Part shown: in pieces, positions 7,420-51,800 of the stretch
Numbering within the stretch: position 1 is the stretch's first letter
How the letters are laid out: every line of letters starts with the position of its first letter
Origin: Pecten maximus
Lineage: Eukaryota
DNA: 64,000 bases
Assembly: GCF_902652985.1 (NCBI RefSeq)
Contig: NC_047017.1
Coordinates: 20,212,001-20,276,000 of the forward strand
Reading direction: 5' to 3'
Position numbers and translations under genes: made by a program
Notes under the pieces: generated by a model
What the model saw: the letters and a program-made list of their open reading frames with translations, nothing else
Databases searched by the model: none
What the model was told of the DNA's origin: nothing

Positions 7420-17038
<9,619 letters not shown>

Positions 17039-27800: not shown

Positions 27801-30800
27801 CTTGTCCAGCATATCTCCAGAGGCCCACTGTCCTCACCTGCGCGCTATCATACTTACCTTTACCTATATGTGTATTATACACAGATGAGGTGAAAATCAG
27901 TGAGGCAGAACTTGGCTACCTGTCCTCAGAGGTGTGGAAGACACTTACCTGGCTACGACGAAGAAGTGGCTACCTCTCCCCCTCCCGATTACACTCGGGG
28001 ATCCGCCTGGGAGACCCTCCCAATTCGATCAAGGTAGGTCCAACATACTGATACGTAATTACACATCGTTTGAATTAAGATATTTCTTGATTTTAAAAGT
28101 ATATACAAACTTTTTTTATTTGGCGGGTAAACGGTTCATTATATACCAGAAAACAGTTGACATACATATTTGAATTCTTGTGTATTCATTGACAAGAGGG
28201 ATGGCTGGAGGTAAGTACATAGGTATACACTTTGTACACAACTGTGTATTGATTAGTTTTGTTTTAAACGTGATAACACAATGATATACTGTACACCACA
28301 TTACGAGTGGCTGACGAAATGTATTACCGGATATATTTACTCGCCGTTATTGGGACACGTGTTTTCTCTTACATCTCTTTATATACCGGACTGGGCCAGG
28401 GTTTAGACACGCCATTCTACTTATCTTTTTTTCCTTTTTTGAAAATTCAAATACCTATTGTTGTTTAAGTTTAAATTCAGAGTATTACATTTCCTAACTT
28501 TAGAAACAGTCTAAGAACATGATATATCAGATCTATTTTTATCGTCACATTCACTTCCTGACAAAACAATTAAAAACTGAGAACTAATTTGAACAGAACT
28601 GTCATTATACAGTTAATCATTATAGTGAACGACTTACAATACATTCCATTTCTATTACATCCTGTTTCTCTTATACTTATTCTCAAAGATATCGATGTAT
28701 TAATATTTTATAGTAGTATTAGGATTAGTAAGTACAAGTTATATGAATTGTTGAAATCTATCTCATCAAATAAAAAAAAAAGTTTATCATCAGAAGTAAA
28801 TAGGAAGAGGAAGAGGGAAATAACCCATACCCCATCCAGTTATATAAAATATATTTATATGAATGCAATGATGAATATAACAAAACTTCAGATATGAGGG
28901 CAACTTTTATTTGCATGAGCATACATGTCTATGCTTTGAGCATGCTGTTTCTTTCAGCCGAGTAAAAGGGGATCAATTAATGTTACTCGTTAATTAAAAA
29001 AAATGAATAACAAAAATATATTAAATTGAGTATTAACTATTAAATACTTACAAGAAGCGTGTACACGCCTACAACTTAACTACTCTTCTGTTTTATGACA
29101 AATAAAAACCAGTCGTTGGTCGGACGGCTCATTATCATTATCACATGTATATTATAAGGCATTTATAAAAAGTGTGATAATTGGTTTCTGTCCCAGTTCA
29201 AGGACGAGCCTAGCAGCCTTATTGACTGAGAAGGAAAACAGGAATTAAGTCTGCTTTCTTGAAATGTAATATATTCATGTTTCATACTGAACGATACATA
29301 TCTCATCGCCAACATAAAAATAACAGTAAAAGAAACATTTTATTCACATTCCAAACATGTTTGCGAAACGGGCACCTGTCAGGGGGAATTCCGTCTATAA
29401 ATAGAAAAATAAACGCTGCAACGCGATTGGCTGAATTTATCCACAGATTGCCAATGATGTGGCGATGTTTGAAAACGATGAGGTCATTCCCAAAAGGCGG
29501 AATTTACCGATAGGACCTATATGAAAGATGTGCCGACGATATTCTAAGGTTTATACCGATATTTGGATATTTATGAGTATTCTAAGGTAAGAAAACTTTA
29601 AAGATTTATTGTAATTCACTATGTACCATTCATAATGTTGGGTAATGCCATGCTTAGACCTCAGGGATGGGAGAGACGGCGATCTACTGTCAGACATGTG
29701 CAGGATAAACGTGTGCCATGATTGGCATCTGTTGCTGTGCTTGAATCACTGTAGTATGTGACCCAGTTCTAACAGATATCTGACAATCCTAGATTCCTGC
29801 CTGAAACTGTTATAGTATACCGGAATGGGAAGTCAAGATTTGTTTAGTTTGACAAAGTTCAACAGTCGAAGTTGTTTGAAACATAAGTACTGTCAGAATT
29901 TGTCCACAGACCTACTTTATCTATCTAGTTAGTTTATGAAGGAAACAAAGTCATGTAACTGAAGCAATTATATCTATAACAATGAAACGATTTCATTTCC
30001 CATCAAAATATATATCCTTTTCCTTATTAATGATTTCCAAATTCACTGAATTTATCATGTTCAGTAAAGAACTTATATTAAGGAATTAGTTGATTAATCT
30101 ATGCCTATGATTTAGTTAATTAATAAGTGCCTATCACTATAATAGTAATCAAGATATCCTTGGGATTTTGTGTATTGCTAACTGGCAATAGATAACCTTA
30201 TAATATAATATATACAGGTCTTTTGACTCTTAGGTTAGCAGTAATTGACAAAAATTTGAATTCAAATTTTGATATTGTGCCAAAAACTTACACCCATTTT
30301 CTGGGCAACTGGGGTACGCGCTCTTTGTCATATCCGTTACACATGATTACAGATTGTTTTTGGCCAGAGTTTGTAATACACACCATCCTCAGTTAATTCA
30401 ATTCAAGGATCTTCAAAAACTGTGAAATATGGATGAAGTGCTAGTGTTGCTAGCAGATATATCATCTGTATTTCGGGTAACAGATCCAGAGCTGTGCAGG
30501 GTGACTGGAGTGAAGTCACATTCCTAAGCTTCACATGGAGACACCGTTTATATACTTAGTTTATCCTTCTTCCTCTTCCCATTTGCCTTTAACTAACTGT
30601 GTCAAAGGGAATACAAACATTACTACAAAGATAATACTCTATGTACTATGTACATTTATGTAACATGGAATTTCTGCCAGATAACATTGAATCCTGTCAA
30701 ATGTTTAAACAGGTCTTGGTAAATCCCAGCAGCTTCTGGAAATATTATCTATAATCTATTAAACATTTGATTGACCAATCAGATTATAATATAATTATGA

Positions 30801-33800
30801 ATATACAGTATTTGCACTTCCTTTGCATGTAGCTGTATACTGTATTGAAAACATACTGAAGTAGTAAAACAGTAGTAAACACGGATAGATGAATTGCATT
30901 CATAAGGGCTATGAATGCAGTTAAATCACTTTCTCTTCTTGCATGTCAGACTTGAATCGTTTTATCAATAGAATTCATGTGCTGTTTTTGCATATACTAA
31001 GTCTTATAATGGAGTAAAAATTCAAAAATTAGACTATACACGTGTATATGCTACATGATTATATATAGGTTACTGCAATACTGGTAATGTTCTTTCAAAC
31101 TTTCCTGATGGTACCTTATATTTATAATTAATCTCCAAATACCCAGATAATATTTAGTCCTTCGATATTTACAGAGTTTTACCCACTTTAAGGGCACCAG
31201 GTGCAAACCTTATGCTCTTGTTAGTGCAACAGTTAGATACATTTAGCATTATTTTAAGTTTACCTGGTAAATGTATTTCATACTTGAACAAAAAAAATCT
31301 TGTAAGATCTCTTCAAAATTGAAAACAATTCTTATACAATTCAAAATAGAAGTAATTATCTAGAGTATAAAAGACTAACAAAAACATATGATGAAAGTTG
31401 TACCTCAAGTTGACCAATATTTCAGCAGCTGGTTCTTGTGCAGAAAGAGTATTACATGATTATAGTCAGAACAAGGTAACATCTCCACTTTGAACTTTTT
31501 ATGCCAGAACTTGATCTTTTGAATTAGTGTTCTTTAGATGGGGTTTAAGTGCTTTGATGTTACGCATGCAAATAAACAAAACTTTCCTAGTATAGCAAGC
31601 ATTTATAGTTTTTAACTCAATCTTTAATAACATCTTAATTTATATCTTCATTAAACTGATTAAAAGAAAAGAAAATCCTTCTAGGATACAAAATAACCCT
31701 GCAGAATTAGATCACTTAGTTTTAATTACAGCGTTGTAAATTACTTGTCCTGATTTTATGTGTACCTACCTCATACCAGGGGGAAAATTTGTATTATAAT
31801 TTGTCCTGATGAAGCCTCGCATATAGAGGCGAAACTAGTCGACAAATAAATTATAAGTAACCCACTTACCTGGTGACACTTGTCCTTGTTGCGGTTAACC
31901 TCCCCCTCTTTACCTCATACCATTTTACATGTACTTGCTACTGTCATATACTAGATACTCCTATCATGATAAAAAAAAAAGACTTTATGAAATGTTAGTT
32001 TATAACTTGCTTTACCAGTAATATTCATACATGTATTGTATATTACATGTGTACATGGAAAGGCTGTAGAAGTATTGTTTAGGCATGTACTGTATATATG
32101 TATATTGTTTAGGCATGTACTGTACATGTATATTGTTTAGGCATGTACTGTACATGTATATTGTTTAGCTCAGGGCAACTGGTGGTAATGTTATCTTTTG
32201 TCTGCATCAGTTTGTTAAATGTGTTCCTGTATCTGAAAGAAAGATACAAAGGGAAGATAGATACCTGCAGGAAATTGTCACTTTTTTTACTTATTGAAGA
32301 AAATGCATACCTGTAAAATAATTTAAAAAAAGAGGTGAAATGCTCCTTAAAATGCATGTCATGGTCATGACAGTAAGTGCTCAACAACTGATAGTTTTAT
32401 ACAGATTATAGATAACTTTCAAGTAACATATTATCAGCTTCATCAGTCGAGTGATCACCTGTAGCTACTACACCATGAGCTGGTAATGTATCATTTTTAG
32501 TTGGAATATAAACGAACACACATTTATTGCATGTTCCGTGACTTACAATTGTAATTGCTGGCATTTACACAAAGCTGAAGTTTGAGTCTGTTCTTGCATA
32601 TATGTTTTTTTTCGCAATAGGTTCTGGTATCCAAATTGAGATCCCGTAAAGTTTAGATATTGGATTTTCAGTGAAATCTTTCATTTACATGAGAACGACT
32701 TCATATATATTGTAAGTTTTAAAATGGAAATTATCTGAATAGCTGTGGTGGAATTCAGTGTATAGATATGTACAGACAGGATTAATACATTATAACTATA
32801 TACAAGACCATGAATAATGAAATGCACAGGTGTATATTTGCTAATAGAAATTTGATGGAATATTCACTAGAGCAAACATCTCTTTGTCCCGTGGCCATTG
32901 AGGCACATCCAGCGCCAATATATGGACTTAAAGACAAGCTGGACACGACAACCATATCCTACTGGTCAGCGAGTCCAATGGAGTGGACAATCAACAATCT
33001 GCCTCTGTGAGTCAACAGAGAAATATGAAATAGCGATTTAGGCCACTTGTTTATTGATATTCAATCAGTGTATTAACTGGCCTGACAAAGGTTCCATTGG
33101 TGATAGACCTTCTATCTCCAGTAGATTGATTTTACTAATCCCGAGGGAGGATGGTTTTGATGGTCAATATATTGTACCTGTTGGAGCCAGAGCTTCTTGT
33201 CACACAGAAAATGTGCCATTGTTGTTAGATTTCATGTCAATAAAGTTGAAGATCTTTTCATTTCCTGGAGATTCAATCCCATTGATTTATTATAGACCTA
33301 GCACATTCATGTGATGCATTAAAAATCTACAATGGTCAAAATAAAAAGGTCTACATGTACAAATTGAACTTCTCATATTATATATTTAATACAATGCTAG
33401 CTGTCAATTATGATGATACAGTGTGACATTTATAAGCATTTTGAGCCTTGCCTTGTATTGAATACATTCATCCATAATCATTAATGGATAAAATTTCCTC
33501 GTATCTGGTTACAAGTTTTAACATGTTTTCTCAAAATAATCATTGAAATACCTAAATATATAGTCCAACATATGTTTTGTAGATGTTCATGCTGTAACAA
33601 ATGAAAAAATGACACAATTTATGTATGATATACATATATAGGTGAATTGAGGTAATGGTATTGGTAATGTCTACTCTATCTGACATATATCAATTTATTG
33701 ATAAATAATAGATTCAATACCTTCACGTCCAAATTAACGAGTCATTGATTTTTTCATTCATTTGACTTAGTATTATGGTAGACTTATACATGTATTTGTG

Positions 33801-36800
33801 CATTTTGATTCAATGATTTTCGAAAGAGGGATGGTCTTTTTTGGCATTTCATTATTGTCTAGGAATCTCCTCACTGTTTCCCAATATCATTAAAACTCTG
33901 TGGCTTCTTTTTTTTAAATGGCTTTTAAGATTTGGTGATTTTTGTTTTAATTTGTGTCGAAAATTATAAAACCTAAGTTAAAAATAACAGTAAATTACCA
34001 GATTATTGTTTGGTAAGCTAGCCAAGTCTAAGGTCTTAGTCACAAATATTTAAAAGAAAAACAACAAAAAACTGCTATACATATGTAGTGTATGGAATAC
34101 AAATTGAAGGTTTAAATTACCCACAATTCAGTAGTCATGTTAGAAAATTATCAATATATATAAAAATAATTAAAAAGTGCATGATAATTTATACAGTGTT
34201 TGTGATCTCCATGCATCGAGTATGTAGACAGACATATTTGTGGTGTAATAAATTGTTCTTGGGCTGTGCTGATAATTCAGTGTATGACCACCTGTAACTG
34301 TTTGCTGTCCCAATACACATTACACACATACAGAATGTGTCCTTAAATGTACCTGTTGTAGACTAGTCTACCTGTTGTGCCCGAGGGACAGTCTTACCTA
34401 TAGTGACAGGGTGTTATGATCAGCACAGAACCAAATGTGTCAGTGTAACCAATTTCTTTATCTGTTTCAATAACACACACGGACAATGTAATCGTTATAT
34501 TCACCGCCATAAACAAATTTTTCTTGGCACTGTAAGTGTTTTTATACTCCTAATGAATCTACTATACTGCTAATGGAGTACTTTCTTTTGTAACAAGTTG
34601 TGAAAAGGAAATTTTAAATGTTTACTAGGATTAGATGTACCAGGATTAAACCACTTCAGTTTCGAAGCGATCTACTTTTACTTGTATATTCCATATAGAA
34701 AAAGTATTATTTTTTGTATACATCGGTTTGATAATCGTGTTTGATACCAATTGTTGTTGAATCAGTCGTGGATAACAATATCAGCCGTATTGTAGATAGG
34801 ATTGGAAACCTTTTGTGATATTTGTCCTCAGGATTGAGTAGGTTACGTAGTTCTACTAATGGTCAAGTCTTGTTACCATTGCAGATCTAGAGCTCTTACA
34901 AAAGGAATCACATTTAATATCGACATTGATCAATATCATACCATTGTAAATCAAGAGCTCATTGACACAATGACATAATAGTAGCATCGTGACCTACTTA
35001 TCTAATACCAAAAGTAGGTCACATTCCAGAAGAAGGTCATGATCACTGCTTTATGATGAATTTTTATATTTTGTATGTTTGTGTTCAGGTATATAGTACA
35101 TTTTCGACAGTTGGAGTAACGTGTCACTGTGGAAGTTTATACATATATGTGTTTAGTATGTGATGGAGTAATAATATATCTAGATCGCCTCCGGTTGGGT
35201 TCAGGCAAATTTACCGTTGTGTAGATCTGTTCTGCATGAATTTCTATTCTGTAAGGTTTCTTTAACCATGAAACATAAAGAGTTATGACTTGTATGCTAG
35301 GATAAGTTCAAGCTCTCATTATCTTTGATCAATCATAAATGAATAAAGTTATTTCCCATATAAAACATCTGATTTCTGTTATAGGATATATCGGACTGCA
35401 CCAAAGACTTATAGGGCCTTATGCCAATATTCAAACAGGTAGAATCCAGTGGTATATATGTACATGTCAAGGTTTAACTCCAATATAACAATTGCCAATA
35501 TATGATATATAGACTAGTGCCTGCCAAGAGCATCGTTGTGTATAACATCAGAAACTGTAAGTAAAGGCTGTGTTTGAAACCCAAGTTTTCTAAACGTTTG
35601 TTATTTATAACCTGTCAGTCATGTGTGGAGAGGATTCTACAGTGTAGTATGAGGAGCCATGCCTTTGGATGCTACTTGTGAGAGTGGAATGTAGGCTGAT
35701 GTCTGTAAACACTTGTTTAAAAGCAAACTCCTGTAGGCATGTTTGGTGGGGAACTCTTGCCCTGGAATCTTCAAATTCATAAGCAAAAATCAGTGTTAAA
35801 AAATTATTAGAAATATGCATGTACAGTTAACATAATTGAAACACTATACTTGTTACATGTATACTATAAAATGTACCTTGTAAAATTGTCTTTATTGTGT
35901 GGTACAAAAAAGAATCGGCCAACAGTTATCTATACAGAAGGTATAAATATATACCGGTATACTCCGGCCCAAGTCTTCAACAGGAAATCTTTCCCTTTCT
36001 GATTTTGTTACAATATAAAGTTTGCTTACTTTACATACTCTTACTAGTGATGTACTATATAGCTACCTATATGATTATGAAACCCAAATCTGTACACAGG
36101 ATGTGGTTCTGTAACGGTTTGGTTTCCAGGACAGGTGGTTCCACTTCAATCCCATGGAGTGAGGTTTGACACTTAGGGAGGGGGTGATTAGATAGTGAGG
36201 ACTATTTCCTTTTTCTTTCAGTGGTGGTGAGCTCGAGGTGTTAAATCATTTCTTTACCAATCTTTGTCTAAAAATGTCAAGAAAAACCTCAGGTTCAGTA
36301 GGTTTGGTAATAAAAATTAAGTAGGTTGAAAACCACAATATGTTTCTGTTTGGCCATATAGAGGTTGGATATGTCAAAGATGATGAAATACCATCTATTT
36401 ATTGTATGAGTGTGAGATTGTTTACACATTGTACATACAAGGTAGAGAGACCATGAGGAAGTATCCCATGTGATGATGTAAATGCCAGCTACCTAATTAA
36501 TTCAGCTATACACATCAAGTCTACATTATTCTGATCTGTATACAAATAGCTTGTGTCCTGTGTGTCCCCACCTAGATTAGGACTGTACTTGTGGCTATGT
36601 GGAGTTTCCACTATTACGCCAACTTCAAATCACATGAATAATTAATGTATTCATGACATGTAAAACAAAAAAGTTATACATGTTGTTTGGTTGTGTCATC
36701 AACAATTTTCAGTGTCTGACAGTGTGGTAACATCAATATAGGAGAGGGGATGGGTCTCTGATAGGATATACTGTAAGGTTTTGAAATAAATAATATCTTA

Positions 36801-39800
36801 TAGACCTAAATACAGTGTTCTTTTCATAGAAGTGTTCATCGGTAAACTTGAGATTATTTATATAAATTATATCGTTCTGTCCATGTGGTCCCCCCTTACC
36901 TTCACCAACTCCCCCACAATGTCACTGCAGTCATAGCAACAACTTCATTGACTCTCTCACACTCTCACTGACTCTCCCACTACAACACTGACTCTCCCTG
37001 CACCCTCATTGACTCTCTCACACTCTCACCGACTCTCCCACTACCTCACTGACTCCCTGTACCATCATGCATTGACTCTCTCACACTCTCACTGACTCTC
37101 CCACTACAACACTGATTCCCTGTACCATCATGCATTGACTCTCTCACACTCTCACTGACTCTCCCACTACCTCACTGACTCCCATGCATCCTCACTGACT
37201 CTCCCACATCCTCACCGACTCCCTGCATCCTCATTAACTCTCCAACAACCTTGCATCCTCACTGACCCTCTCACACATTCACCGGCTCTGCAAACCCTCA
37301 TCAACTCCCCCACATCCTTACTGACTCCCCCTCACGCTCACTGACTCTCTCACACCTTCACCGGCTTCAAAAACCCTCATCAGCTCCCCCACATCCTTAC
37401 TGTCTCCCCCTCACCCTCACTGACTCTCTCACACCTTCACCGGCTTCAAAAACCCTCATCAGCTCCCCCACATCCTTACTCCCCCTCACCCTCACTGACT
37501 CTCTCACACCCTCACCGGTTCCGCAAACCCTCATCAACTCCTCCACATCCTTACTCACTCCCCCTCACCCTCACAGACTCTCTCACACCCTCACCGGTTC
37601 CGCAAACCCTCATCAACTCCTCCACATCCTTACTCCCCCTCACCCTCACTGACTCTCTCACACCCTCACCGGTTCCGCAAACCCTCATCAACTCCTCCAC
37701 ATCCTTACTCACTCCCCCTCACCCTCACAGACTCTCTCACACCCTCACCAACCCACCCTCACTCTTTACCCATTATTGTAATCCACCCACTGTCAGGCTC
37801 TCTCAGTTCTATAATATCATTGCCTGGAGTCTGAATAAACATTTAATGGAACTTACTGTATATACCATCTGCAGCAGTTTTTTCATGGCAAAAATTGTAT
37901 CAAATCAATACAGTGTCCTAGTAGTAGTCGATAGCCGACTACATTGTCAGCCTACTCAAGCTTACCTGATTTATATATAGGTAGGCCTAGCCAGGTACAA
38001 AAAATCAATTAATAGGGGAAATAAAAAAGGTTGTTTTACCAAAGCAGACATCACTTATATGTGTGTGAGGACTGATGATGAAGATTGGGATCAGATGGGG
38101 GAAATTGCTACCAGTAATAACGTAGTGTATTGTCTGCGTGTCCTGATCGTATTACCTGGCCATATATTTGTATAGGTCTATTTAGAGGGTTGTTATTTGT
38201 GTAATATAAATGTGGTTGGACTTTATGTCCCTGTAAATATCGAGACCATGCCCAGTTAATTGTTTTTTCCCAGACAAATTTGTCTCCTACAACACATAAC
38301 AGCAGTTCCTCTTGTCGTTTCCCAAATTTTCTTTTTGGCCAATTCACAACAATTCTTCGTTCTCCCTCAAGTTCTCATCCTTCATGGTTTTGCATACTGC
38401 AGAGCAGTAACATTTGACTGAAACATTTAATAAGTATATATGCTACAATAGCAGCTGAATTGTTCTCAATTGTTCTTTCATTTGGTCTTTATATTTACTT
38501 CCCCTTCTCCTTCTTCTTTCACTTCATCATATTGGTCATCCTCCATGATTTGCATCACGCAGAGCAGAGCAGTAATACTTGACTTTAAAATCATCTTTTA
38601 TCTTGGAATTGGGTCTGAGCATTTCCAAATCCTATAATTACCGATGGTAATTGTTATGTATTTTCTCTTCTTTCCTAAATTCTTATATACAGTGTATATA
38701 TATATATTATTGGTCACATTCGCTGCGAGGTAGGTAAAGTTTCTTCTTTCCATCTATCGTGATGTTTTATTGAGTGTTAAATATGCTAGTAAAGATGAAA
38801 TATTTACCGAAAGTTCATAAAATGTACTTTAAGTATGTAATGTAGAGGTAGCATGAGTACTGTATATACATTTGTATATATCTAGTTTATAGGTTCACAG
38901 GTACCAATGGTGAAAGATTTATGGCATTAAAATCAATTTTTAAGCTGCACACAAGAAAATACTGTTAAATTTCTAGTAGGGATTGAGTGCAGCCTGTGAA
39001 GGTATGTGTGATTCTTATCATCATTTGACACATCCCCCAGCTCACTCCTGATACAATCTAGTCAGTATGAGTTGCAGCCATGCTGAAACCCTGACACAAC
39101 CAATACCTCCGGGTCCACAAGGATATCCAGGAAAATAATTAGGTGAAATGTATTATCATTTAAATTAGGAGCCCACCTAAAGATATAAGCACCACTGAAC
39201 ATATACTCAACACTGCATTAGATCATGTCAATTAGGTCTTCAAAAATATGATTTCCCAACTGATGCTTGTGACATCATCAAGCTTCCTTCAGCTTAATTA
39301 AAAGTTGTGACTGCCAGTCAGATTCTGTCAATGTCGTCTCCTGTGAATTACGAAATCAATATATTGTAATGAATTTTTTTTTGCATCTTCTACATGAGTT
39401 AATTATTTCAAAGTTACTTTATACTACCGTCAATGTCATGAATGATAAGCGTCATGTTAAATCTTACAGATGTTTCCTTTTTAGACGATCAATTGGAGAC
39501 TAATTATTTATCTGAAAGCACTGACATTTAAGAACATAATTACTGGTGTGAGAGGATTTGAATTAGAATCCCTTCCCAAACCTTTACACAGGTTTCATTA
39601 TTGGTTGATGTTGGAGTATAGTTATAAACCTTATTGGATTACTTACATGGTATTTCTTCACTAGTTTGGGATGGGCTCTTATGCCTCATTTTGGGAATAG
39701 AATTGGTGACTTCGAAAGAAATTTTCAGGAGAAACCTGCAAAATTTGGAAATTTGGCTTCAATATGAAAAAATGGTCAGTTGGGAATTGGGGTGGGAAGG

Positions 39801-42800
39801 GGGAGGAGGGGCATTATTTGCCCAAAATGCCCAAGGTACCCACATATCGGTAGTAATATAGATCGTCAGAGGGTTCACCATTGATGCAGGGTTATAATAT
39901 ATTGACAGTACATATAATTATGTGACAGAACATGGGTATAGTACTATAGATATATGGTACTGACAGTCTGATGTAAGATATATACTATTACTAGTACTGG
40001 GTAGTAACCTTAGCACTGACAGATTCTATAGAACTTGGTGCCAATCACCAGGTGTATACACCAGAATTAGTCGGAATAGTTAGGAGGATATTGGCCATAT
40101 GGGAGATCCTTGTCTGTGACCCTGTCTAACATGTATACAGTGTATTTACACCACAGTTAACCCCAGAATCCTATTCATCTGTTCCTATATGTCTTAGTAC
40201 TATAATGCATCTGTTGATAGATCACCCCAGTACTGTGATGTAGATTTAGTATGTTGGTACCATTCAGTACTGCGGTAGTATGTTGGGTGTTATATATACT
40301 GCCCTGCCGAAACACAGGTACATCAAATTAACTGTACGTGTATATCATCGGAAACCTGCAGTCAGCGCTCATTATGACAACTCATATGCACTTGTAGTGA
40401 CAAGTATGGGAGTCTCCTTATCATCATAGATCTAGAGAAAAAGAAGGAGGCTGGTGAAACCTTGTTAGGAATGAGGATTGTAGGTAAATATATGTCATAA
40501 GATAAGTAGTGGCAATATTACAGACAAAGGAATTTGTTGAATTTTAGAGGCAATCCACCAACACCCAAATACATCAACATTACACTAAGGAAAACAACTT
40601 GACTGTGTCGTAACACAAGACGTCAAACAAGAATTTATATATAGCATAAACTAAGATAGATGTAGGGTAAAATTATCTCCTCAATAAACATGGAGTTGTG
40701 CCAATGATAATTAGGCACATGTAATTATTAATGTTGATTTCATTAAAGTCACATACTCTTGGAATTAGTTTTTGAAAGCCTTATCATGCAAATTATTATT
40801 CTATAAGATTTTGAGTGACTTTGAACACCAGTAAGTCATATACGCGAATCTTGATTTTTGCATTTGAAGAGGCAATAGCTAGGTCTTTATTGAGTGAAGA
40901 AAACTGGCCTGAATTGTACAGTGAATATCAGTACTAGCTCCTGGATATACATAAAGATGTCTTTGAAGTCGTACATATGATCCATAAGCCAACATTTCTA
41001 TATCTAGAGTTAGATTGGGATAGGCAGTGATCATGAAGACAGTTTGGCAAATGATCAGATTATCATTGAAATGCCAAATCCATAATGTTGTATGTAAATT
41101 ACTACCATCGTCAATTTCTCAAGACTAGATTTGTTTCATCTGAGTGTCGTTTGTACTAAAAGTATTGTAATTCAGGGCCCCAAGGAAGACATCTGGACTT
41201 GAAATGAATGTAAACAAGCTCATGACACACCATATGTTTGTATTACAAGTTTAATTTGATAGTTTGTAACATATGGTTTTCATCATGACATCGATTTCCA
41301 TTAATCCTTGATCACCCTGCTGATATTAATGAAGATCATAATTAGCCCACAAGGCTATGGATATGAAATGTGTCCGAATCCATTGATGACCCATTTAAAT
41401 AGAATCTAGGCTATTTCTACATCTAATGAACTGGGAAAGTACTTATACTTGACACAGATATATAAGAGTTAGCCATAATTATGTGCTTGTTTTATTCTGT
41501 AGCCTATATTGAAATAAACCTGTCTGACTAACGAGACTATTTATTATCAGAGTTATATAAGATACTGGTATGTTTGTATCTATAGAATGAAAACCTCTAG
41601 ATACAACAAACCCCAAGAGATATACAAGCTATGTAATAGTTAGGTATGATGTAGGTAATTCTACACATATGATAGAGTATATACATGTGTGTATGAGATC
41701 ATGATCATAGCTCTGGAGAAAATGGACCAGGGATGCTGGCAATCAGTGTACTTATGCTTTAGATTCTTTGTCCTGTCAAAGATGAAGATTTGAATGAAAT
41801 ATAGCAAAGTCTGGACATTTGGAAAGCAGTATTACCCTAAATTTATTACTTGATTTTTCTTTTAAAACACTAATGAATCTTATCGATACATAAACTAATA
41901 TAGCTGTTTGGTATATGAAGCTAACTAGTGGCAGACTTGGAACAAGTGCACAGTGATGTAATCCCTGTGTCTAATGATGAAGCTCTGGGGGATTGAGTCT
42001 GATTACAACACAATGGTGTCCTTATCTACCCGCTGAGAAACACTGCAGACATTTTAATAGTTATCAGGCTCGGAACCACCATACACCAAAGAATTACCAC
42101 AATTACAGTAAAACGCCTAGGAACAAAGTCGTTATATCAGTATTTATAACATGTATGATGCGATTAATGTTTGTGTATTTTTAGCCTGCTGTATCAAATG
42201 AAATGTGTATAATCGCTAGATTGGTGGGATTTATCTATCGGCATTTACAGCATCCTTACTCTCAGCAAATGAAGCATTTCATGCCCTGTATCATGTTAAG
42301 CAGGTCAAGATATTTTTTGATATCTGAAAACTTTGGTATGTAACTGATAAATATGTGATAACATATAGCCTGGTATTCAACTAGATAATATATATATATG
42401 AAAGTCTTGTGGTATTCAGCTAGATATTATATATATAAGTATTGATAAAGAAAATTAGCTCCACATGTTAGCTAATGCTAATAAGCTCGGTGCAGCTACA
42501 ATTGTATACATATCTGGGGTATAAGGCACATTGGAAGTATGTATTTGTAATTATGAAGATCTCATTGGAGAAAACAATACAAATTAATAATGTGAATTTC
42601 ACTTACTGAAATTAAAACTCCATGCCAGGATGACTATAAATCATATTCTTCAGGTACATACCTGTTTACTGTAGACAAAAGAAAATTGAATAACTCAATT
42701 AAGTACATTTAGTACATTAAAGTCATCTTGAAGAAAATATGTGTAAATATTAAATACAGTTTTTGAATTAATTCCTCTCAGCTTTTCATAGCCAGACATG

Positions 42801-45800
42801 CGTTCTGTCGGATAAAGTGAATTGGATTGGATAAATGGAGAGAGTGCTGTGGCATTGACCAGCATTGATGTATGTATTGATTAATTAGGGGTATTATCGG
42901 AAGCCTATGGGCCATTTCACCTGTATAATCGCAAATTCAGACCTTAATATATACAGTAATCACCATTAATACTTAATTAGAGCTTGGTGAGCGGACTAGC
43001 GGGGCGGTAATCCGTCAACGCTAGAATCATTCCTGGTCCACACTCTCCAATCAGTAGACATATATTTTTCATAGGTGAATTACTTCCCTTTTGTGACTAG
43101 TTTTCAGATGCTGTGAGGGGTCAAAGTAGAGGTCAGGATACAACATGCGTAAGTGTTGGTCTGTAGTACCTGGCCAGTGTGAGATCAATATTGGTAAAAG
43201 ATTAGGGTTGGACATTAACAACGGGCAGATTTACAAGCTCCTTGACAGAAAACACTGGATGTGTGTGATACTGCATGATATAGAGATGTAACAGGAAACT
43301 GACCAATGACCAAAGTCCATTGTGCTCGGTCAGAAAACTGATCATTGGAACTGATGAGACCTTGGAGGAATTAATATAAAAAATCTGGTCCGAAGGTTTT
43401 GTCATTTTGATCAATACACAGCCATTGACCATCTGGCTTCATTAGCTGATCAAGAGACTGGAAATATGTTTTCTCCATTTGTTGATGTTACAAAAAAAAA
43501 ATGCTTTTAATGTCTTTTATATCATGGAGACATGCTGGGTACATATTTTTGCTTCAATTATCAGACATCATGCAGACAGCTTTAAGAATATATAAAAATA
43601 AAAATGTATTATTCATAGAATTCATAATGGCGCAATTTCATATTGAAATCAAGGACATCATTGGATTTAAGCCCAAAGTTAAAAGATAACACAACCGATT
43701 GACAAAGCACATCAACTTTATACTTTAAAAAGTATAACAAGAAGAAAATTCTAATGGTTTTCCTGTATGGCAATTTGGAATTTTCACTCATACAAAAATA
43801 CCAAGGTATATTTACCTCTGATACTTAGCTGGAATCTTTACTAACATCCTCTGTGTATCGTATATAATTATAATTAGCTCCAGTATACACCTGTGTTCAC
43901 CATATAAGTACCCACTATAAGAGGGTTGGATTCACAGCATCTCCCAGGCACTATCAAGTTTCCCTGTCTCTGTTTCATATTACAAACAATTTGTGCTTAG
44001 TTATTAAATCTTTAATAATACAGCTCTGGAGAAACTCACATGTAGGATTATTATTATTAAAGGGTGTTTGTAAGCTATCAGCCATTATATATTAAACTGT
44101 TTTCATGTCGGTCTCTCTTATTTGATCTAATCAAATGTACTTTTATAAGTCTCAGACATATACTTTTCTTATCTAGTTTAAATGTGTGTTGTAGAGATTT
44201 ATGAAAATAGAGGTATGATTTTATAAACTTGTCACAGATTTTGGTAACTGTGTGTTCATTGATTTAAAAGTGGATCTTTGTATAATCCAGACGGTTGATC
44301 AATTGTTTTACAAAATAACTTTGAAGTTTTTCCAGTTTATGTAAAGAACATAATATTTTTGAAGGAAAGGCTGAGAGAAGATATAATATTTAACTGTCTC
44401 TTGAAGGATTTCGGAATGATAGAACATGTACATTGTTCTTGATGGAAGAGCTCCAGTTTTCTATGCAAGTTCATTTTCCGACCATGCTTTTGTCCATTTG
44501 TACAACTGGGCAGACTCAATCAGGGTTAAATTTTTGATGATACAGGGTTTGAGCTTCATCCGTCTGTAACAAAACATTCTTCTACCTGTAATTGTATAAG
44601 ATGAATGGTTGATCTGCCTTTTGGTTCTGCAGTAACTTATAAAATTCAACTGTGTATACCTTGGTATAAGAAGTCTGAAGAGAGGGGCTCAGTTGGTTTT
44701 AGTTTCAGTCTATGTAAACCCCAGGTGAAGATCCATAGTGAGAGGCCTAGGTTCAACAATTCCCGCCTTTGGCAGTTTGTGTTTCTTGAGAAGCTGAGAA
44801 ACAGACTGGGTCTGAGCTGTCATGATTGCGTCCGTGGGCAAGACACTTTACCCTAACTGCTCTGTATGGCATGCATCAGGCCTACCATATTTTGTTTTGT
44901 GAGGTAGCCACAAGCTACTACATTGTACTAGAAAACCCCTATCTAAAAATACCATGGCTGTTCATGATGTTATAAACCCAACAATAAACAAACAAACTGA
45001 AGTGGAACTATAGGACATTGTATTATATGTGATCTACCTTATATTTCGGCCTGTTATAGAAGTCTCTAAGGTACAGGACTAGCTAGATATAGGCTGAACA
45101 TTACGACTGTTGTCAATGCTGAGCAGTTCATGATCTTAAGACTTCAGAATATTAATGGTATATATATATATATATATATATAACCTTTGTTATACAAGGT
45201 CAGACCAAGGACAACTGCTACCTGAATTAGATTTATTTAAAAGCTACAGGCATGTTTTAAGGCATTCAAACAAATAGAAAACATGAAAATGTTCTTTTGT
45301 GAGATCTCCTTTCATGATTTCAACCTACAATAACAAGTGTTTGGTTTTTTGTTTTGTTTTGAAATAGAGTTTGGTTGGCTGGACATGAATGTATATGATA
45401 GCTATATTTCCTTGTATATACCCTCTGGTATTGCCTCATTGTAGTTACGACTCTTTAGAATATTATTGACAAACCATAAATGTTGGGTTTCTTTGTTGTT
45501 TTAGTTGTATTATGTGTATGATGCTTTTGACCAAGTTGCTAAAAATGGCCACAATTCACCCTTACAGTTTTAAAAGCCAGATCAGATTTCAGTTTAAAAA
45601 AATAGGTCTTTTCTTGGTACAAATTTGGGGTGACAAAAACATGACCAGAGATTCAGTAAATTGTTTACTAGGAAGTTGGGTAATGCAGACCTTCAAATGG
45701 ATAGCGTGACAGACTGACGGATCATTTTGTCCCACGGCAGTTGTATATAAAAAAAACTCTGTATTGATGTCCTCTTTTGTCTGTATTCAGACTCGCTCAG

Positions 45801-48800
45801 GTGTTGAAATTGCGTAATGTTCTATATTTTGCTGTTTTTGTTAGATTTAACGACACAGGTTTTGATATTCATAGCTGTGTGTATTCTAATTGTCAACAGC
45901 GATTGTTGTCGGAGAATGAATTAAGAGAGAGTGAATTAAGTTACGGTCAGGTTTTGAATACAGATTTTATAGATGTGCATTAAAATTTTCTTATGTAGAT
46001 GTTTTAAGTTATGCTGCAGTAAGTTTGCTTTCATAGCCAGTGGGAATGCCAACCACAGTCAATGTTTAAAGTTTAAATATTTTTACTGATAATTAATCGC
46101 AGATATTTCAATGTCAAATGAAATCGTATTTAGTTTTATTAATTGTGATTGCTTGTTGAAAATACAACACTGCCTGTCACAGGAAAAAAATTAAAATTCT
46201 TCAAAAAAAGTTTTCTTGCCTATATCTGTACAATTGTTTCCAAAACTGGAAACACAACTAAATTATGTTTACCTATGTAGTGCAGCTTATACCAAGATCA
46301 GATTTGATAGATTGCACATGATCAATTTGTCATTGAAACCGTTGACAATATAACCACACAATCCATAATACCTAGTCATTATAAATGTTCAGGATGCTTT
46401 TCTTTTGGTCGAGAAACAAAGTAAAAAGAATCATTTGTTCAATCAAGATTAATGTAAACTTGTACAAATTTTAAGTATAGAACACTTGGGATATTTCCAG
46501 CTTATACTTCCCACATCTTTATATACCTGCTATAGGTATATATTGTTGTAAACAGAGGGATTGTAATCTGTTTTACCTTACTCCAACCCCAACTTCCTGT
46601 ATCCATGGCAACTGATAGGATTTTCATGCTATGGTCAAGACAGGTGCTGAGTTGTTTGTTCTTGGTAAATGACCGATCCTCCAGACCAGTCTAATCCAAC
46701 AACCAGACAGCAGAATTTACTCGTAGTGTAATGAAGGAGAAGGGAGAAAGATTCTTGAACCAGCTAGTCTGATTGTAAACCTTTCTGGAAGATAATTAGT
46801 ACATCGTTCAGCAGACAGTCTAAGATTATGTTGCCCTATGGGGCAAACAATCATTATTGTTGATACTGGTTATTAGATGGCTGTCTTTTGAAATAAAAGG
46901 AAAAAAAATTCCCAATATAAATATAGATCAATTTGTTTTGAAGAGACACTCCAGTATCCATTTCTCCATGTATACATGTACCTGTCTGCAGGGTATCATT
47001 GCCATGGTTACTGAATGGTAAAGAAATGGATTGGAGACCAGGTAAAAGGCACTGTGATGGGCTATAAACAAACAATTCTACATTAACTTCATGGAGCACC
47101 AAGAATATACTAATTGGTGATAAAGATATATAATGTGTATTAATGTCAGTTAGGTCGGTTGATCTGATATATTGAGATGTTCTATCAGCGACCGTTGGCC
47201 TTGAGGGAGATTATTACTGGTTATATAGACAGTGTAAGGTTGGGAATTATTCCAGCTCCAAGTGATCCCATCAGCAAAGTATAATACTGATGTAGGCGAT
47301 GTTTCATAGTTAATGTAATAAAGTGTATCTAGATCTAGGTTCCATTCATTATCTTCCTGAATGGCCAGCTCCTGTTGGTTGTTAACATCACCAAGTGCCA
47401 TAGTTATATGTTTAGTCCCCTAATCTTTAACACCAGTACACAGACCACTTTTGGTTGTTGGCATGACAGGTTTGTTTGGTACATCTTTGTGATCACTACC
47501 GGTGAAGGAGGGCAATATTTGGCAATTGTGAATCATTAAGCAGTACAACCTGTTTCATTGATATTTCTTAACTTTAAAATTTCCATAGGAAAGCATTACA
47601 AAATTTAAGAAGTTCCTTTACTAAGACTTTTGTCTTTTAAGTTCAATAATGCTTTCTTTCTGAAAATTTAAGATAAGGAACGTTGATGAGACCTAAGTCA
47701 GGTGTCCTGTCGTTAGCTGCCAAAAAAAGTTGTTGCCATGTTCAGAGGATGAATGTGGCTACCTAGATTGGATCTAGATTTACATTGTGGGAGTCTTCAA
47801 TGAATCTGAAGATGCTTACACTTCTGGAACATCTGGTCCTGTACTTTTCCAGGGCCTCATCACATGCTTATTAATATTATAGTTATATTTTGTTAATATT
47901 TCCCAGTCAGTCTCATTCATGGATTTTGAGTTAGAAATACGACTTCATTTGAATGTTTGGTATTCTCTTGTATTTTAGAGACTCCTTCTTTAAATGAAGA
48001 AAATATTACACTGTTTATCTATATACATGCTCAAAACCAACTTAAAGTAAGTAAGGTTCATGTATAACTCAATCAAAGCTGAACCATGAACTCTTAATAA
48101 AACAAAATCCTGGATCTGCCCCCATATGTCACAGAGTTCACCCTATCTCAGTAAATTTTCTGTAAATCCCTAAACCAAACTTATATCTGACTGCCACATC
48201 CTCATCAGCTGTAGATATCATTACTTCCTATGTGCCCCTGTACACAAGTCAATATGCCAGTAAGTTAAACAACTTTTTACTACAGCTATGGTGGAGCTTT
48301 ATGGCAGCTGTAGCTTATAAATAGGTGGCTATGAAAAGATTATTTCCATTATTACTTAATGAGTCGCACATGCTTCTTAAATTGAGAAGGATACAGACCA
48401 GAACTTGTAAACAAAGATTTAAATGCAGCATCATGTTTTTATAATTTCTATATTAACATGCCAAATGTCAATTTTAGCACTTTGACTAAAAAAATGTATT
48501 AAAGGAAAAGTAAATTTGTGTGGCTATAAAGATGAAAGATGATAAAGGCCAATTCGACTGTTTACTATATATATACGTATATACCCGTAAACTCTATATG
48601 ATATTTACAAATCCAGACCCCTGTTGGATCATATCTTTAAAACATATCTAACAAATATGAGTAATTTATAAGTAGCTGTGATGACTAGTCCAGTCAAATC
48701 GTGTATCATATTTTGGGTGATACATAATTTAGTAAAGGGTAATGACCCTGTACAAGTCTGAGGACACTTCATTCTATCATATGTGTAATAACTTACTGAT

Positions 48801-51800
48801 CAGTGGTAAAGGGATGAGTCTAGTGAGTAAATATATACATGATGTTTGAAGGACAAGAATGATTCTTAAGTTAAAAAAAAAAAAAAACATGATGAAATAT
48901 TTTATAAGGGAATCCTGTTTTCCGAAATCACTCATGATACAACTTTGTTAAGTTTTGAGTTTTGAAGGTCAAGATAACCTTGTACCTGGGTACTGGGCAG
49001 AAGAGGACAATTAACAGTGGGATATATGTACATTGTGTTTCCTTTCTGATACGTGAATGTTATTGAGGAACTTAAGTTGAATGACACCGATATTGAGGAA
49101 CTTAAGTTGAATGACACCGATATTGAGGAACTTGAGTTGAATGACACCGATATTGAGGAACTTGAGTTGAATGACACCGTTCAAAGTTAGACTGACCTGT
49201 ATACCTGTATACATATCAGCCACACAGGTGACTTAAGTGAAGTTTATGCATGGCAGGGGGAATTTATTTGAGACCTTCAGAATGTCTTTCATGGTGTTAT
49301 TTTCATTCTAACTTCTGTTTGATTTGAGATTCAGTTTGACATTGAGGAATGATTTACATATTTCCTGTATAACTTCACACTTTGTATATTTACATATTTG
49401 TACCAGAGGAAGAAGAGATTTTACCGAGTAAATTGTATTGAGCCACACTAAACACAGAGCTATGAATCTTCTTTCACTATGAGTCTCATATACCGTATCT
49501 TATATTTTTTGACAACCAATTATAAAATAACCAAATTAAATATGGGAGTACTTGTGGGACTGTTGTAGTGGATGTTGTGCTCAAATATATGTATACAGAG
49601 TTATAGCCCTTTATAATTTTCAATAGCAAAATTTGCATGTCTTGGAGTACTGAATTGCTTGCTCATTGATGTTTACAATAAAATCTGTCTCATAAACTAA
49701 TCTTGATTTTCAACTTGAGGAGTTCTTGGTTATATAAAATCAGTTAAATACCACATGTATATGTCTTATACTGTCCGTAAAATTTCACATGATGTGATTT
49801 TAAATTCCCACACTGAGTATGTTGAACATCTTATCATTAAGTTTAACCCTAATCAGTGGTTTGCTGTGACACAGATTGTCAGGAGAAATCACACACACCT
49901 CAATGACAAGCTCACAGACACTGGCTGACACAGATATTCTTGTTTAACAACTTCTGGACCACTAAACCTTTATACAGATCTGAAGTGACAGAATTTTCTC
50001 ATGCAGATCTTGTCCTTTCGGACTAAAATAAACTGAAAGTTGAATCCTATTGTGTATTGGAGGTGTAAACCGGGATAAATTGCCTACATTAAGGATGTCC
50101 GTACTTTACTGAATGTGAGAAAGATGGCCAGCAGAAGTGTCGAAGTAGAACAGACTTCAGAATAGCATTTACTGAAATCTATCATTGTGTATAATGAAAA
50201 GGTAAAATAAATGATTAAAATCAGTAGAGTTCTCTTGAGACCAGTTCATAGTAATAATGAGGTAATTAAACTGGGTGTACGCAAGCGTGTCCGATCGTCA
50301 TCCCAGCAATATCACATAAAACACATTTAAGTGTATAGACTTACCAAAATTGATTTTCTACCAAATCAATTTTCAATACCCATGATATTAAAATCCTGTC
50401 ACAAAATCTATAGAGTACCATGTTCATTCAAAATTAAAAGACCAAGTCTCACATTGAAAGTCGGTAGGACAGGTTCAAATTACAGATGAAATATGGTTTT
50501 GATTTTTGTGACCCAGGACCTTAACTTGAGGGTAAATGGGGAAGTTGTTGTTTCTCAGGTTAAGAATGTTCATTACATTTAAATATCAGAAATTAATTAA
50601 AGAAATAAAGAAATCAACATGATTAATGATTTATATTCTATAGGCAATATTAAGCACATTAATTTGACTTGTGTAAGTCTATTATGTAGCAGTGAGCTAG
50701 CTACCTGTTACCAATATAACCTATATAGGGCCTCTTTTTGAAATAAAATGTGATGTATCCTGTATATAAACTACAATGTGTAAGCTGTAGGTCTACAGTG
50801 GTTTACTTTCTTCTGTACGTGTTTGAAACCTCTTCAACATTCCTACTACCCTAGCAGCAATTATTGGCAGCCTACCCATATATTACTCTCTAGTGCTTTT
50901 AACTCGAGGTTTGAATATATATATACAAAATGTACTACCGGAACTCTATGGAAAAGTCATTATGTATTTGTGAATGGATTCTTCAAGACACATACTAGAT
51001 ATATATACCAATTGTGGCGTTTATCCCTCACATTATCTATAGGTGCATTTCCCCTTGATGGCTTAATATAGATTGTTTAACGAAGTGTAGATGTACTGGT
51101 TACAGAAAAAAAAGAAGAAGAAAAACAGCTTCAGCTATAAATATACACTGGATACCACCTGTTCTCATTGTGTTTTGGGCTGTAAGCATTGGAGGGAGTT
51201 ATGTACAATTTTGTAGTAGTGATTTTGAATTGTATGTGTATTAGATATGTCTAATGATAAATTACATGTATTCATAATTTTGATTAGATCATTTTTTAGT
51301 GAAGAAAATGATTCTTTATACATGAAATGATGTCAATAGATATTTATATATATATGTATATCTAGATCTATTGGTGCTGATAGGTACCTGCAAGCTGGTT
51401 TATAGGCCTATTAATTGATTATTTTCTTTTGTTGTGTACTTTCAGGAACTGATACAAGAAGTTAAAGTAAGTCAAGGATCCATTGACCATCTTCTGGACA
51501 GAGGTCAAAGGTTCTTGGAGACATTTCCAGACATCAAACTAAAAGTTGATCTGGAAAACTTGGCATTTTACTGGAGGACTTATGTGAAGGAGCTGCAGTC
51601 GCTGGACAGCCTACAGATCTACTGGCTTTTTACTCCGAGGCCAGAGACCCAGACAGGAAATTGTCACCTGCCGCTTAATCCAGACTCATCTGCTTTGTCT
51701 GACCTTGGTAAGAGGCCACAGTGCATCCCAAGGTCACAGGAATGGAAGCAATGTGTCTACAAATATGGAAAGTCTGTTGAGAATTACAAATCTCAACAGC

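What the first reader, a model, noticed from the sequence alone, without database searches (positions are those of the whole stretch)
31767..31922. Intact hammerhead ribozyme on a 132-bp, TSD-flanked mini-retroelement, in sense inside a 23-kb intron
Seen: ATTTGTC-CTGATGA-A-GCCTC-GCATATA-GAGGC-GAAA-CTAG-TC-GACAAAT keeps every catalytic-core nucleotide. It has a 7-bp stem I that extends past a 4-nt bulge (TTATA/TATAA), a 5-bp GC-rich stem II, a self-complementary stem III (ACTAGT), a GUC cleavage site (after 31840) and an AATAAA right behind it. The unit 31779-31910 lies between perfect 12-bp direct repeats (TACCTCATACCA); its ends carry GGGGG and CCCCC, and it contains a consensus antisense donor (CAG|GTAAGT, reverse of 31864-31872). 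Established: minimal type I hammerheads with palindromic stem III are hallmarks of Penelope-like element pLTRs and non-LTR retrozymes, and are thought to cleave as dimers; an extra A between A9 and G10.1 occurs in active natural hammerheads. Inference: this is a young, non-coding, ribozyme-carrying mobile unit, possibly an undescribed bivalve retrozyme family. Because it is sense to the host pre-mRNA it could cut the nascent intron, dependent on dimerisation with a second transcript or a retrozyme RNA in trans.
Basis: partly seen in the sequence, partly recalled or inferred. Interest (0 to 1): 0.88.

Follow-up and report, generated by a model that had tools for sequence, protein, structure and literature searches.

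The report
Truncated Penelope retroelement tail with hammerhead
The 132-bp insert is the broken-off 3' tail of a Penelope-like retrotransposon, carrying that family's usual small hammerhead ribozyme; it landed recently in a gene's intron and is still absent in other individuals, so it is real but ordinary transposon biology.

Summary
The 132-bp unit (31779-31910) sits between perfect 12-bp direct repeats. It carries a complete type I hammerhead (31799-47) and lies in sense in a 23,412-bp GT..AG intron of a nesprin-like gene.

The unit is not a self-contained mini-retroelement or a retrozyme. In other genomic copies the homology runs upstream into a GIY-YIG endonuclease ORF, and the sister family has a full RT + GIY-YIG ORF between 408-bp pseudo-LTRs. 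The family also shows variable 5' truncation, head-to-head inverted partial copies, an optional 3' "tail" and TSDs of 10-16 bp. These are the published hallmarks of Penelope-like elements (PLEs).

The ribozyme is the published PLE "min-HHR": a bulged base before helix II and a loopless 6-nt palindromic helix III, thought to act as a dimer. Related PLE families in this genome keep it with compensatory changes in 11 of 15 pairs.

An empty-site allele, skipping exactly 144 bp, is present in DNA of other individuals, so the insertion is young and polymorphic. Cleavage of the host pre-mRNA is untested and unlikely, because single min-HHRs were inactive in vitro in the literature.

First-stage notes of this scan mention other hammerhead-bearing repeats elsewhere in this genome; I did not check them.

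The parts
31767..31778 (.). Left copy of the 12-bp target-site duplication TACCTCATACCA. The last 2 nt (CA) are also microhomology with the element sequence upstream of the truncation point.
   Evidence: The empty-site joint has 12 letters that fit either side.
31779..31910 (+). 5'-truncated 3' end (132 bp) of a Penelope-like retroelement, of the tail-less 3'-end type (...CCTCCCCCTCTT[TA]).
   Evidence: 99% identical to the last 132 bp of longer copies. In those copies homology continues upstream, into a GIY-YIG ORF.
31799..31847 (+). Minimal type I hammerhead ribozyme: helix I 31799-805/31841-847; core CUGAUGA 31806-812; bulged A 31813; helix II 31814-818/31826-830; GAA 31831-833; palindromic helix III ACUAGU 31834-839; C17 31840; predicted cleavage between 31840 and 31841.
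   Evidence: covariation among PLE families.
31845..31850 (+). AATAAA directly 3' of the ribozyme. AATAAA is also present just 3' of the ribozyme in the related families L025, L046 and L048/L053. Its function is unknown.
31911..31922 (.). Right copy of the 12-bp target-site duplication.
28034..51445 (+). Host intron (23,412 bp, GT..AG) between exon 2 (27884-28033) and exon 3 (from 51446) of a nesprin-like spectrin-repeat/KASH gene. The insertion lies in sense within it.
   Evidence: A spectrin repeat is found in a downstream exon.

Best explanation
This is a dead-on-arrival, 5'-truncated copy of a Penelope-like retroelement (PLE).

How it arose. The element's RT/GIY-YIG protein nicked the intron DNA. 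It started reverse transcription at the family's proximal start site (...CCCCCTCTTT) and copied only 132 nt of the 3' region, which includes the hammerhead. The cDNA was then joined at a 2-nt microhomology (CA), leaving a 12-bp target-site duplication. These steps are inferred from the anatomy and from the published PLE mechanism.

The ribozyme. It is the family's own PLE-type min-HHR. Between PLE families it is kept under selection, which is shown here by compensatory changes. Its loopless palindromic helix III means it can only become active by pairing with a second copy (dimer), which is inferred from the literature.

Status in the host. In this solitary intronic copy the ribozyme is a passenger. 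The insertion is recent and still segregating in the population. It most likely has no ribozyme-mediated effect on the host pre-mRNA.
For: 1. Family and truncation. There are at least 46 genomic matches; 10 have the full 132 bp at 98-100%, and many are truncated at different 5' points. All other full matches continue upstream with the same sequence. Copies of 176, 252, 427, 531, 902 and about 1,814 bp all share the same 3' end.

2. Coding capacity. The longest copy encodes a 238-aa ORF with GIY-YIG (PF01541, 26.5 bits against a cut-off of 22.6) and a C-x3-C-x2-C linker. The sister family (54% identical endonuclease) has a 703-748-aa RVT_1 + GIY-YIG ORF between 408-bp direct repeats that are 99.5% identical. 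Each repeat carries the ribozyme.

3. PLE hallmarks as described in PMC8557442 and PMC11167929.
- Head-to-head inverted 5'-truncated partners.
- An optional tail at one end only, about 115 bp here.
- Variable TSDs of 10-16 bp in other copies.

4. Ribozyme conservation. Eight hammerheads from at least six PLE lineages show a change on both sides in 11 of 15 pairs. Helix III is paired in 100% of cells (ACUAGU, ACCGGU, ACAUGU, AGUACU). None of 500 shuffles reaches the observed values, and the slid controls are far lower.

5. Empty-site allele. The joint 31766->31911 skips 144 bp (= 132 + 12). It lies in a 4,711-nt DNA contig of another sample and study (X5), and also in X3.

6. Youth. The copy differs from the family consensus by a single 1-nt C-run indel.

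7. Transcription. The family is transcribed: a 1,138-nt RNA-seq contig runs from upstream element sequence into the ribozyme (X19).
Against: - No full-length copy of this exact subfamily with an RT was found. The longest copy is 1.8 kb, so the RT is inferred from the sister family.
- The RVT_1 score of the sister ORF (28.9 bits) is just under Pfam's cut-off (29.6).
- No Rfam hammerhead model reaches threshold.
- No cleavage data exist. The RNA evidence is contigs only, which cannot show ends. These contigs run across 31840/41, so uncleaved RNA exists.
- The tail is about 115 bp, longer than the published 30-40 bp.
Confidence: 0.93

Rival explanations
1. A non-autonomous mini-retroelement or non-LTR retrozyme: a 132-bp non-coding unit that moves as such, possibly through a circular RNA, using a PLE's enzymes.
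For: The unit is short, non-coding, TSD-flanked and carries a type I hammerhead. A 2026 preprint argues that animal retrozymes derive from PLE pLTRs.
Against: - No other copy shares the 5' end at 31779; all continue into PLE sequence.
- The 5' ends are scattered.
- None of the 46 matches is a tandem array. The C4 pair is a 1.56-kb segmental duplication.
- There is only a single ribozyme, so no unit-length RNA can be excised.
- Published mollusc retrozymes are tandem repeats of about 350-390 bp (PMC7229834).
Confidence: 0.03
2. An intronic ribozyme that acts on the host. In sense orientation, it cleaves the nascent nesprin-like pre-mRNA after pairing through ACUAGU with PLE transcripts in trans, or with the same-strand copy 44 kb downstream. 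This would lower expression of the insertion allele.
For: - The sense orientation in the intron is confirmed.
- The core is intact.
- Family RNA with the same palindrome is expressed.
- A same-orientation copy lies 44 kb downstream.
Against: - Single min-HHRs showed no detectable cleavage, and dimers only low cleavage, in vitro (PMC4209133).
- In the anole PLE no RNA-seq reads begin or end at the ribozyme site (PMC11167929).
- The insertion is polymorphic and about 99% identical to its family, so there has been no time for, and there is no sign of, host selection.
- The thermodynamic fold of the monomer prefers an inactive extension of helix I.
Confidence: 0.03
3. A solo terminal inverted repeat of a DNA transposon, as suggested by the many inverted pairs of the unit.
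For: Inverted pairs with the same outer ends are found at C17, C4 and C2.
Against: - The sequence between the arms is itself two head-to-head copies of an RT/GIY-YIG element of unequal length.
- 5' truncation points vary and TSD lengths vary from 10 to 16 bp.
- This arrangement is the published PLE insertion structure (PMC8557442).
Confidence: 0.01

Closest known systems
Endonuclease-containing Penelope-like elements with a CX2-5CxxC linker (Neptune/Nematis type; Arkhipova 2006; Craig et al. 2021, PMC8557442)
   Same: RT plus a C-terminal GIY-YIG endonuclease with a C-x3-C-x2-C linker; pseudo-LTRs; frequent 5' truncation; an adjacent inverted truncated copy; a tail at one end only; a hammerhead in the pLTR near the 3' end.
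   Different: The tail is about 115 bp rather than 30-40 bp. The clade carries a conserved second ORF with two C2H2 zinc fingers downstream of RT-EN; I found no description of this in one quick search. Clade placement by RT phylogeny was not done.
PLE min-HHR (Cervera & de la Pena 2014, PMC4209133)
   Same: [quoted passage not shown]
   Different: Here helix III is a 6-nt palindrome (ACUAGU). The cited paper describes a range from no helix III at all to small palindromic inserts. Activity was not tested here.
Metazoan non-LTR retrozymes (Cervera & de la Pena 2020, PMC7229834), including the mussel family
   Same: Type I hammerhead, low GC content, TSDs longer than 4 bp, and co-occurrence with PLEs in molluscs.
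   Different: Retrozymes are tandem repeats of 170-400 bp, each with its own ribozyme, and are expressed as circRNAs. This is a single truncated copy of a coding element.
Conserved intronic hammerheads of amniotes (HH9/HH10; De la Pena & Garcia-Robles 2010; known to me from memory and cited in PMC7229834)
   Same: A hammerhead in sense within an intron of a protein-coding gene.
   Different: Those are ultraconserved, monomer-competent ribozymes with a stable helix III. This one is a polymorphic, weeks-old-in-evolutionary-terms transposon fragment with a loopless helix III.

Membership tests
Penelope-like element (EN+) | Reverse transcriptase fused to a C-terminal GIY-YIG endonuclease | tested here: met
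   The sister family ORF (L046:1498-3609:-) has RVT_1 at 28.9 bits (cut-off 29.6, so marginal) plus GIY-YIG at 26.5 bits (cut-off 22.6). The longest copy of this family has GIY-YIG only, because it is 5'-truncated within the ORF.
Penelope-like element (EN+) | Pseudo-LTRs (partial tandem), often with an adjacent inverted 5'-truncated copy | tested here: met
   408-bp direct repeats, 99.5% identical, flank the ORFs in L066. Inverted pairs are seen at C17, C4, C2, C3, C12, C16 and others.
Penelope-like element (EN+) | Optional 'tail' extension at one end, reflecting two RT start sites | tested here: met
   There are two classes of 3' end...CTCTTT(A), or the same plus a conserved tail of about 115 bp. 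In inverted pairs only one arm has the tail. The published length is 30-40 bp.
Penelope-like element (EN+) | RT groups with PLE/TERT reverse transcriptases in a phylogeny | not tested
Hammerhead ribozyme, PLE min-HHR variant | Catalytic core C3-A9, G12-A14, A15.1-U16.1 and H17 in a type I arrangement | tested here: met
   CUGAUGA ... GAA A....U C at 31806-31840. The core columns are invariant among 8 lineage representatives.
Hammerhead ribozyme, PLE min-HHR variant | Helices supported by covariation; helix III short, palindromic and loopless; bulged base before helix II | tested here: met
   11 of 15 pairs show compensatory change, 0 of 500 shuffles reach this, and helix III is 100% paired. 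The bulge is present in 6 of the 8 representatives.
Hammerhead ribozyme, PLE min-HHR variant | Match to a curated covariance model (Rfam) | tested here: not met
   There are no hits at gathering score. The best hit is RAGATH-1-hammerhead at 15.9 bits against 56.3, and there is no Hammerhead_1 hit at E<=10. Rfam models expect a helix III hairpin; the 2014 paper needed a special descriptor.
Hammerhead ribozyme, PLE min-HHR variant | Self-cleavage at H17 | not testable with these tools
   Only Logan contigs were available. They cross 31840/41 and cannot show RNA ends.
Non-LTR retrozyme | Tandem repeats of 170-400 bp, each with a hammerhead, and no coding capacity of their own | tested here: not met
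   This is a single copy and the genome has no tandem array of the unit. The sequence is the 3' end of a coding PLE.
Non-LTR retrozyme | Unit-length circular RNA | not testable with these tools
   Raw reads were not available for these runs.

The most novel reading that the evidence does not exclude
The sense-strand min-HHR in the 23-kb intron is switched on in trans by transcripts of its own PLE family, which carry the same ACUAGU palindrome and are expressed. The insertion allele of the nesprin-like gene would then be cut co-transcriptionally. That would make it a naturally segregating, allele-specific ribozyme knock-down.
Probability: 0.03. Interest if true: 0.7.

Novelty: new member of a known kind. 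Interest (0 to 1): 0.25.

Why it matters
This finding mainly serves as a clean worked example. It shows that PLEs with hammerheads have been active very recently in this bivalve genome, because presence and absence alleles are still segregating. It also gives a well-defined natural pair of alleles, with and without a sense intronic min-HHR. That pair could be used to ask whether such ribozymes ever act on host transcripts. It does not reveal a new kind of element or ribozyme.

The side observations may interest transposon specialists more than the insertion itself. They are a conserved zinc-finger ORF 3' of RT-EN, a 115-bp tail, and a pile-up of 5' ends at the ribozyme's 5' edge.

Tried and rejected
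- Rfam scans at gathering score and at E<=10 gave no usable hit. I judged this uninformative for this variant.
- ViennaRNA folding of monomer and dimer. The monomer minimum-energy fold keeps helices I and II but pairs core nucleotides with CUAG. The active dimer is not nested, so its energy could not be evaluated. The predicted dimers use other palindromes (GUCGAC). I drew no conclusion.
- The direct pair at C4:17.19 Mb looked like a retrozyme-like tandem. It is a 1,563-bp local duplication of an old 3'-deleted copy plus its flank.
- I considered a GGGGG/CCCCC closing helix and the antisense donor CAG|GTAAGT as functional features. Neither is kept in the sister family.
tblastn of P0001 on L012 found no exon.
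- Pfam on the host exons gave only a weak spectrin hit. Gene identity comes from the homologue P0001, whose C-terminus ends like a KASH domain (a resemblance from memory).
- Organism: the assembly size (918,306,378 bp), the 3,983 contigs and 19 large ones match my memory of the great scallop Pecten maximus assembly. The paper search to confirm this failed on syntax and I did not repeat it.

Full report
**1. Observation**

TACCTCATACCA occurs at 31767-31778 and again at 31911-31922, with 132 bp between the two copies.

The hammerhead is complete:
- Helix I: 31799-31805 pairs with 31841-31847 (7 bp).
- Core: CUGAUGA 31806-31812, followed by an extra A at 31813.
- Helix II: GCCUC/GAGGC, 31814-18 with 31826-30.
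- GAA 31831-33.
- Helix III: the palindrome ACUAGU 31834-39.
- C17 at 31840.

A simple descriptor finds only this motif in the 64-kb window. None of 200 dinucleotide shuffles gave a motif of comparable quality.

Rfam gave nothing at gathering score. On the 301-nt region it gave only a 15.9-bit RAGATH-1-hammerhead match against a cut-off of 56.3. I do not accept that. This variant has no helix III hairpin, and its discoverers needed a purpose-made descriptor (PMC4209133).

**2. What the 132 bp are**

The unit matches at least 46 places in its own genome. Ten places hold all 132 bp at 98-100% identity. In all nine of those outside the window, the homology continues upstream of position 1, with the same sequence ending ...GAACCCCGAAAAATGTACTTCA just before GGGGG. 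Downstream, it stops at ...CCTCCCCCCTCTTT. So the GGGGG "end" of the window copy is a truncation point, not an element terminus.

Copies of 176, 252, 427, 531, 902 and about 1,814 bp share the same 3' end.

The longest copy (C17) contains a 238-aa ORF. It has a C-x3-C-x2-C linker and a GIY-YIG domain (PF01541, 26.5 bits against a cut-off of 22.6).

The genome holds hundreds of related endonuclease genes: 583 candidates, of which 150 were scored. The nearest relative has a 54% identical endonuclease. It carries an intact RVT_1 + GIY-YIG frame of 703-748 aa between 408-bp direct repeats that are 99.5% identical. Each repeat has the ribozyme.

**3. Family hallmarks**

Several copies form head-to-head pairs of unequal, 5'-truncated arms.

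There are two classes of 3' end. One stops at CTCTTT(A). The other continues for a conserved stretch of about 115 bp. In the pairs, only one arm has the extension.

Other solitary copies have TSDs of 16, 10 and about 10 bp.

These features are what Craig et al. 2021 (PMC8557442) and Frangieh et al. 2024 (PMC11167929) describe for Penelope-like elements. They list heavy 5' truncation, pseudo-LTRs, an adjacent inverted truncated copy, and a "tail" present at one end that corresponds to two internal RT start sites.

The CX2-5CxxC linker points to the Neptune/Nematis type rather than Penelope/Poseidon. This rests on the sequence motif only; I made no tree.

**4. The ribozyme is a conserved part of these elements**

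Related PLE lineages in the same genome carry a hammerhead at the same place, near the 3' end. The stems differ:
- Helix II: GCCUC/GAGGC, GCCCU/AGGGC, GCCU/AGGC, GACUGU/ACAGUC.
- Helix III: ACUAGU, ACCGGU, ACAUGU, AGUACU. It is always a loopless 6-nt palindrome.

On an alignment of eight representatives:
- 11 of 15 pairs show a change on both sides.
- Helix III is paired in 100% of cells.
- None of 500 shuffles reaches the observed values, and sliding the partners by one to three columns collapses the signal.

A sequence pattern for this ribozyme type hits the genome 101 times, against 0 for the reversed control.

An older copy (87% identical) has lost the core (TTAATGA). That is what neutral decay after insertion would produce.

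**5. Age and polymorphism**

The window copy differs from the family consensus by one base in a C-run.

I laid contigs of four public runs on 29000-34900. One joint runs from 31766 to 31911 and skips 144 bp (132 + 12), with 12 letters that fit either side. It lies in a 4,711-nt DNA contig from a different sample and study (X5). A shorter contig shows the same joint in X3.

The insertion is therefore recent and segregating.

**6. Host context**

A representative-library search with the large exon returned a 1470-aa homologue, P0001. tblastn of P0001 maps six + strand exons in the window.

Exon 2 ends at 28033 (AAG|GTAGGT) and exon 3 starts at 51446 (after ...TTTCAG). The intron is 23,412 bp and the ribozyme is in sense.

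The protein has spectrin repeats. Its C-terminus looks like a KASH domain (a resemblance from memory), so I call it nesprin-like.

**7. Mechanism and likely consequence**

The insertion mechanism is inferred, not shown. The steps are target-primed reverse transcription from the proximal RT start site, an early stop after 132 nt, and joining at a CA microhomology.

The function of the ribozyme in the PLE life cycle is itself unsettled in the literature:
- Single min-HHRs gave no detectable cleavage in vitro, and dimers gave low cleavage.
- Catalytic mutants of the anole PLE still inserted in vitro.
- No RNA-seq ends mapped to the anole ribozyme cut site.

Here, a true RNA-seq run (X19) holds a 1,138-nt contig that runs from upstream element sequence through 31777-31850. 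An 88-nt contig covers 31821-31906. So the family is transcribed and uncleaved RNA exists. Contigs cannot show ends.

For the host intron, cleavage would need a partner RNA with the same palindrome. Such RNAs exist, so the idea is not excluded. I put it at about 3%.

**8. Comparison and novelty**

This is a new member, possibly an unannotated family, of a well-described kind. It is an EN+ Penelope-like element with the published min-HHR, seen as an ordinary truncated insertion.

It is not a retrozyme. It has no tandem array and no second ribozyme, and the sequence belongs to a coding element.

Mussels and other invertebrates are already reported to hold PLEs with atypical type I hammerheads (PMC7229834).

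**9. Earlier notes of this scan**

First-reader notes on other pieces of this genome mention 49-nt hammerhead minisatellites and a "Penelope-like/retrozyme" architecture. I did not examine them and they did not shape this reading.

**10. Limits**

- No raw reads were available, so there is no end mapping.
- No full-length RT-bearing copy of this exact subfamily was found.
- Clade placement was not tested.
- The region downstream of the window could not be fetched.

Noticed in passing
L002:657-1289 (+), L046:904-1497 (-); also L047, L048, L049, L050-L053, L043: This PLE clade has a second ORF that starts right after the RT-EN stop codon. It is about 195-210 aa with two C2H2 zinc fingers. It is intact and 45% identical between two families (E 6e-52), and recognisable down to families with a 37% identical endonuclease. 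One quick literature search found no description of a 3' zinc-finger ORF in PLEs.
   Followed up: partly
Flanks of L003, L005, L006, L011-L015, L018, L021, L023 (3' of ...CTCTTT): The optional PLE 'tail' of this family is about 115 bp (ATATTTATATACTCTGTTAATCGCC...CCTTCCTTATTTA), roughly three times the published 30-40 bp. It is present on only one arm of inverted pairs.
   Followed up: partly
Copies L011-L016, L018, L019, L021, L022, L024, L028; equivalent to window 31799-31806: The 5' ends of 12 of about 30 copies pile up within 8 nt at the 5' strand of hammerhead helix I (unit positions 21-28). Most of these copies have the tail and a short inverted partner. This could be a transcription start in the pLTR, or an RT stop or template switch at the folded ribozyme.
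   Followed up: no
G000:C3:20288128-20288339 (44 kb downstream of the finding, outside the window): A head-to-head pair of the same family lies here, with its + strand arm in the same orientation as the window copy.
   Followed up: partly
window 31821 (read laying loose ends, runs X6 and X19): RNA-run contigs join an unrelated sequence (...CATTTACATAATTGTCATTTACAATTGTA) to the unit at 31821. Presumably another family copy, truncated at unit position 43, is expressed within some other transcript.
   Followed up: no
L030:1495-1640: An older copy (87% identical) has a decayed catalytic core (TTAATGA instead of CTGATGA). This is consistent with neutral decay of inserted copies.
   Followed up: no
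window 12695-17038 (+): Exons of a DEAD-box helicase gene (Helicase_C, DDX52-like by eye) lie upstream of the nesprin-like gene on the same strand.
   Followed up: no
window 31845-31850; L025, L046, L048/L053 equivalents: AATAAA directly follows the hammerhead in four related PLE families, about 60-85 nt before the RT start sites. It is unclear whether it acts as a polyadenylation signal or as part of a structure.
   Followed up: no
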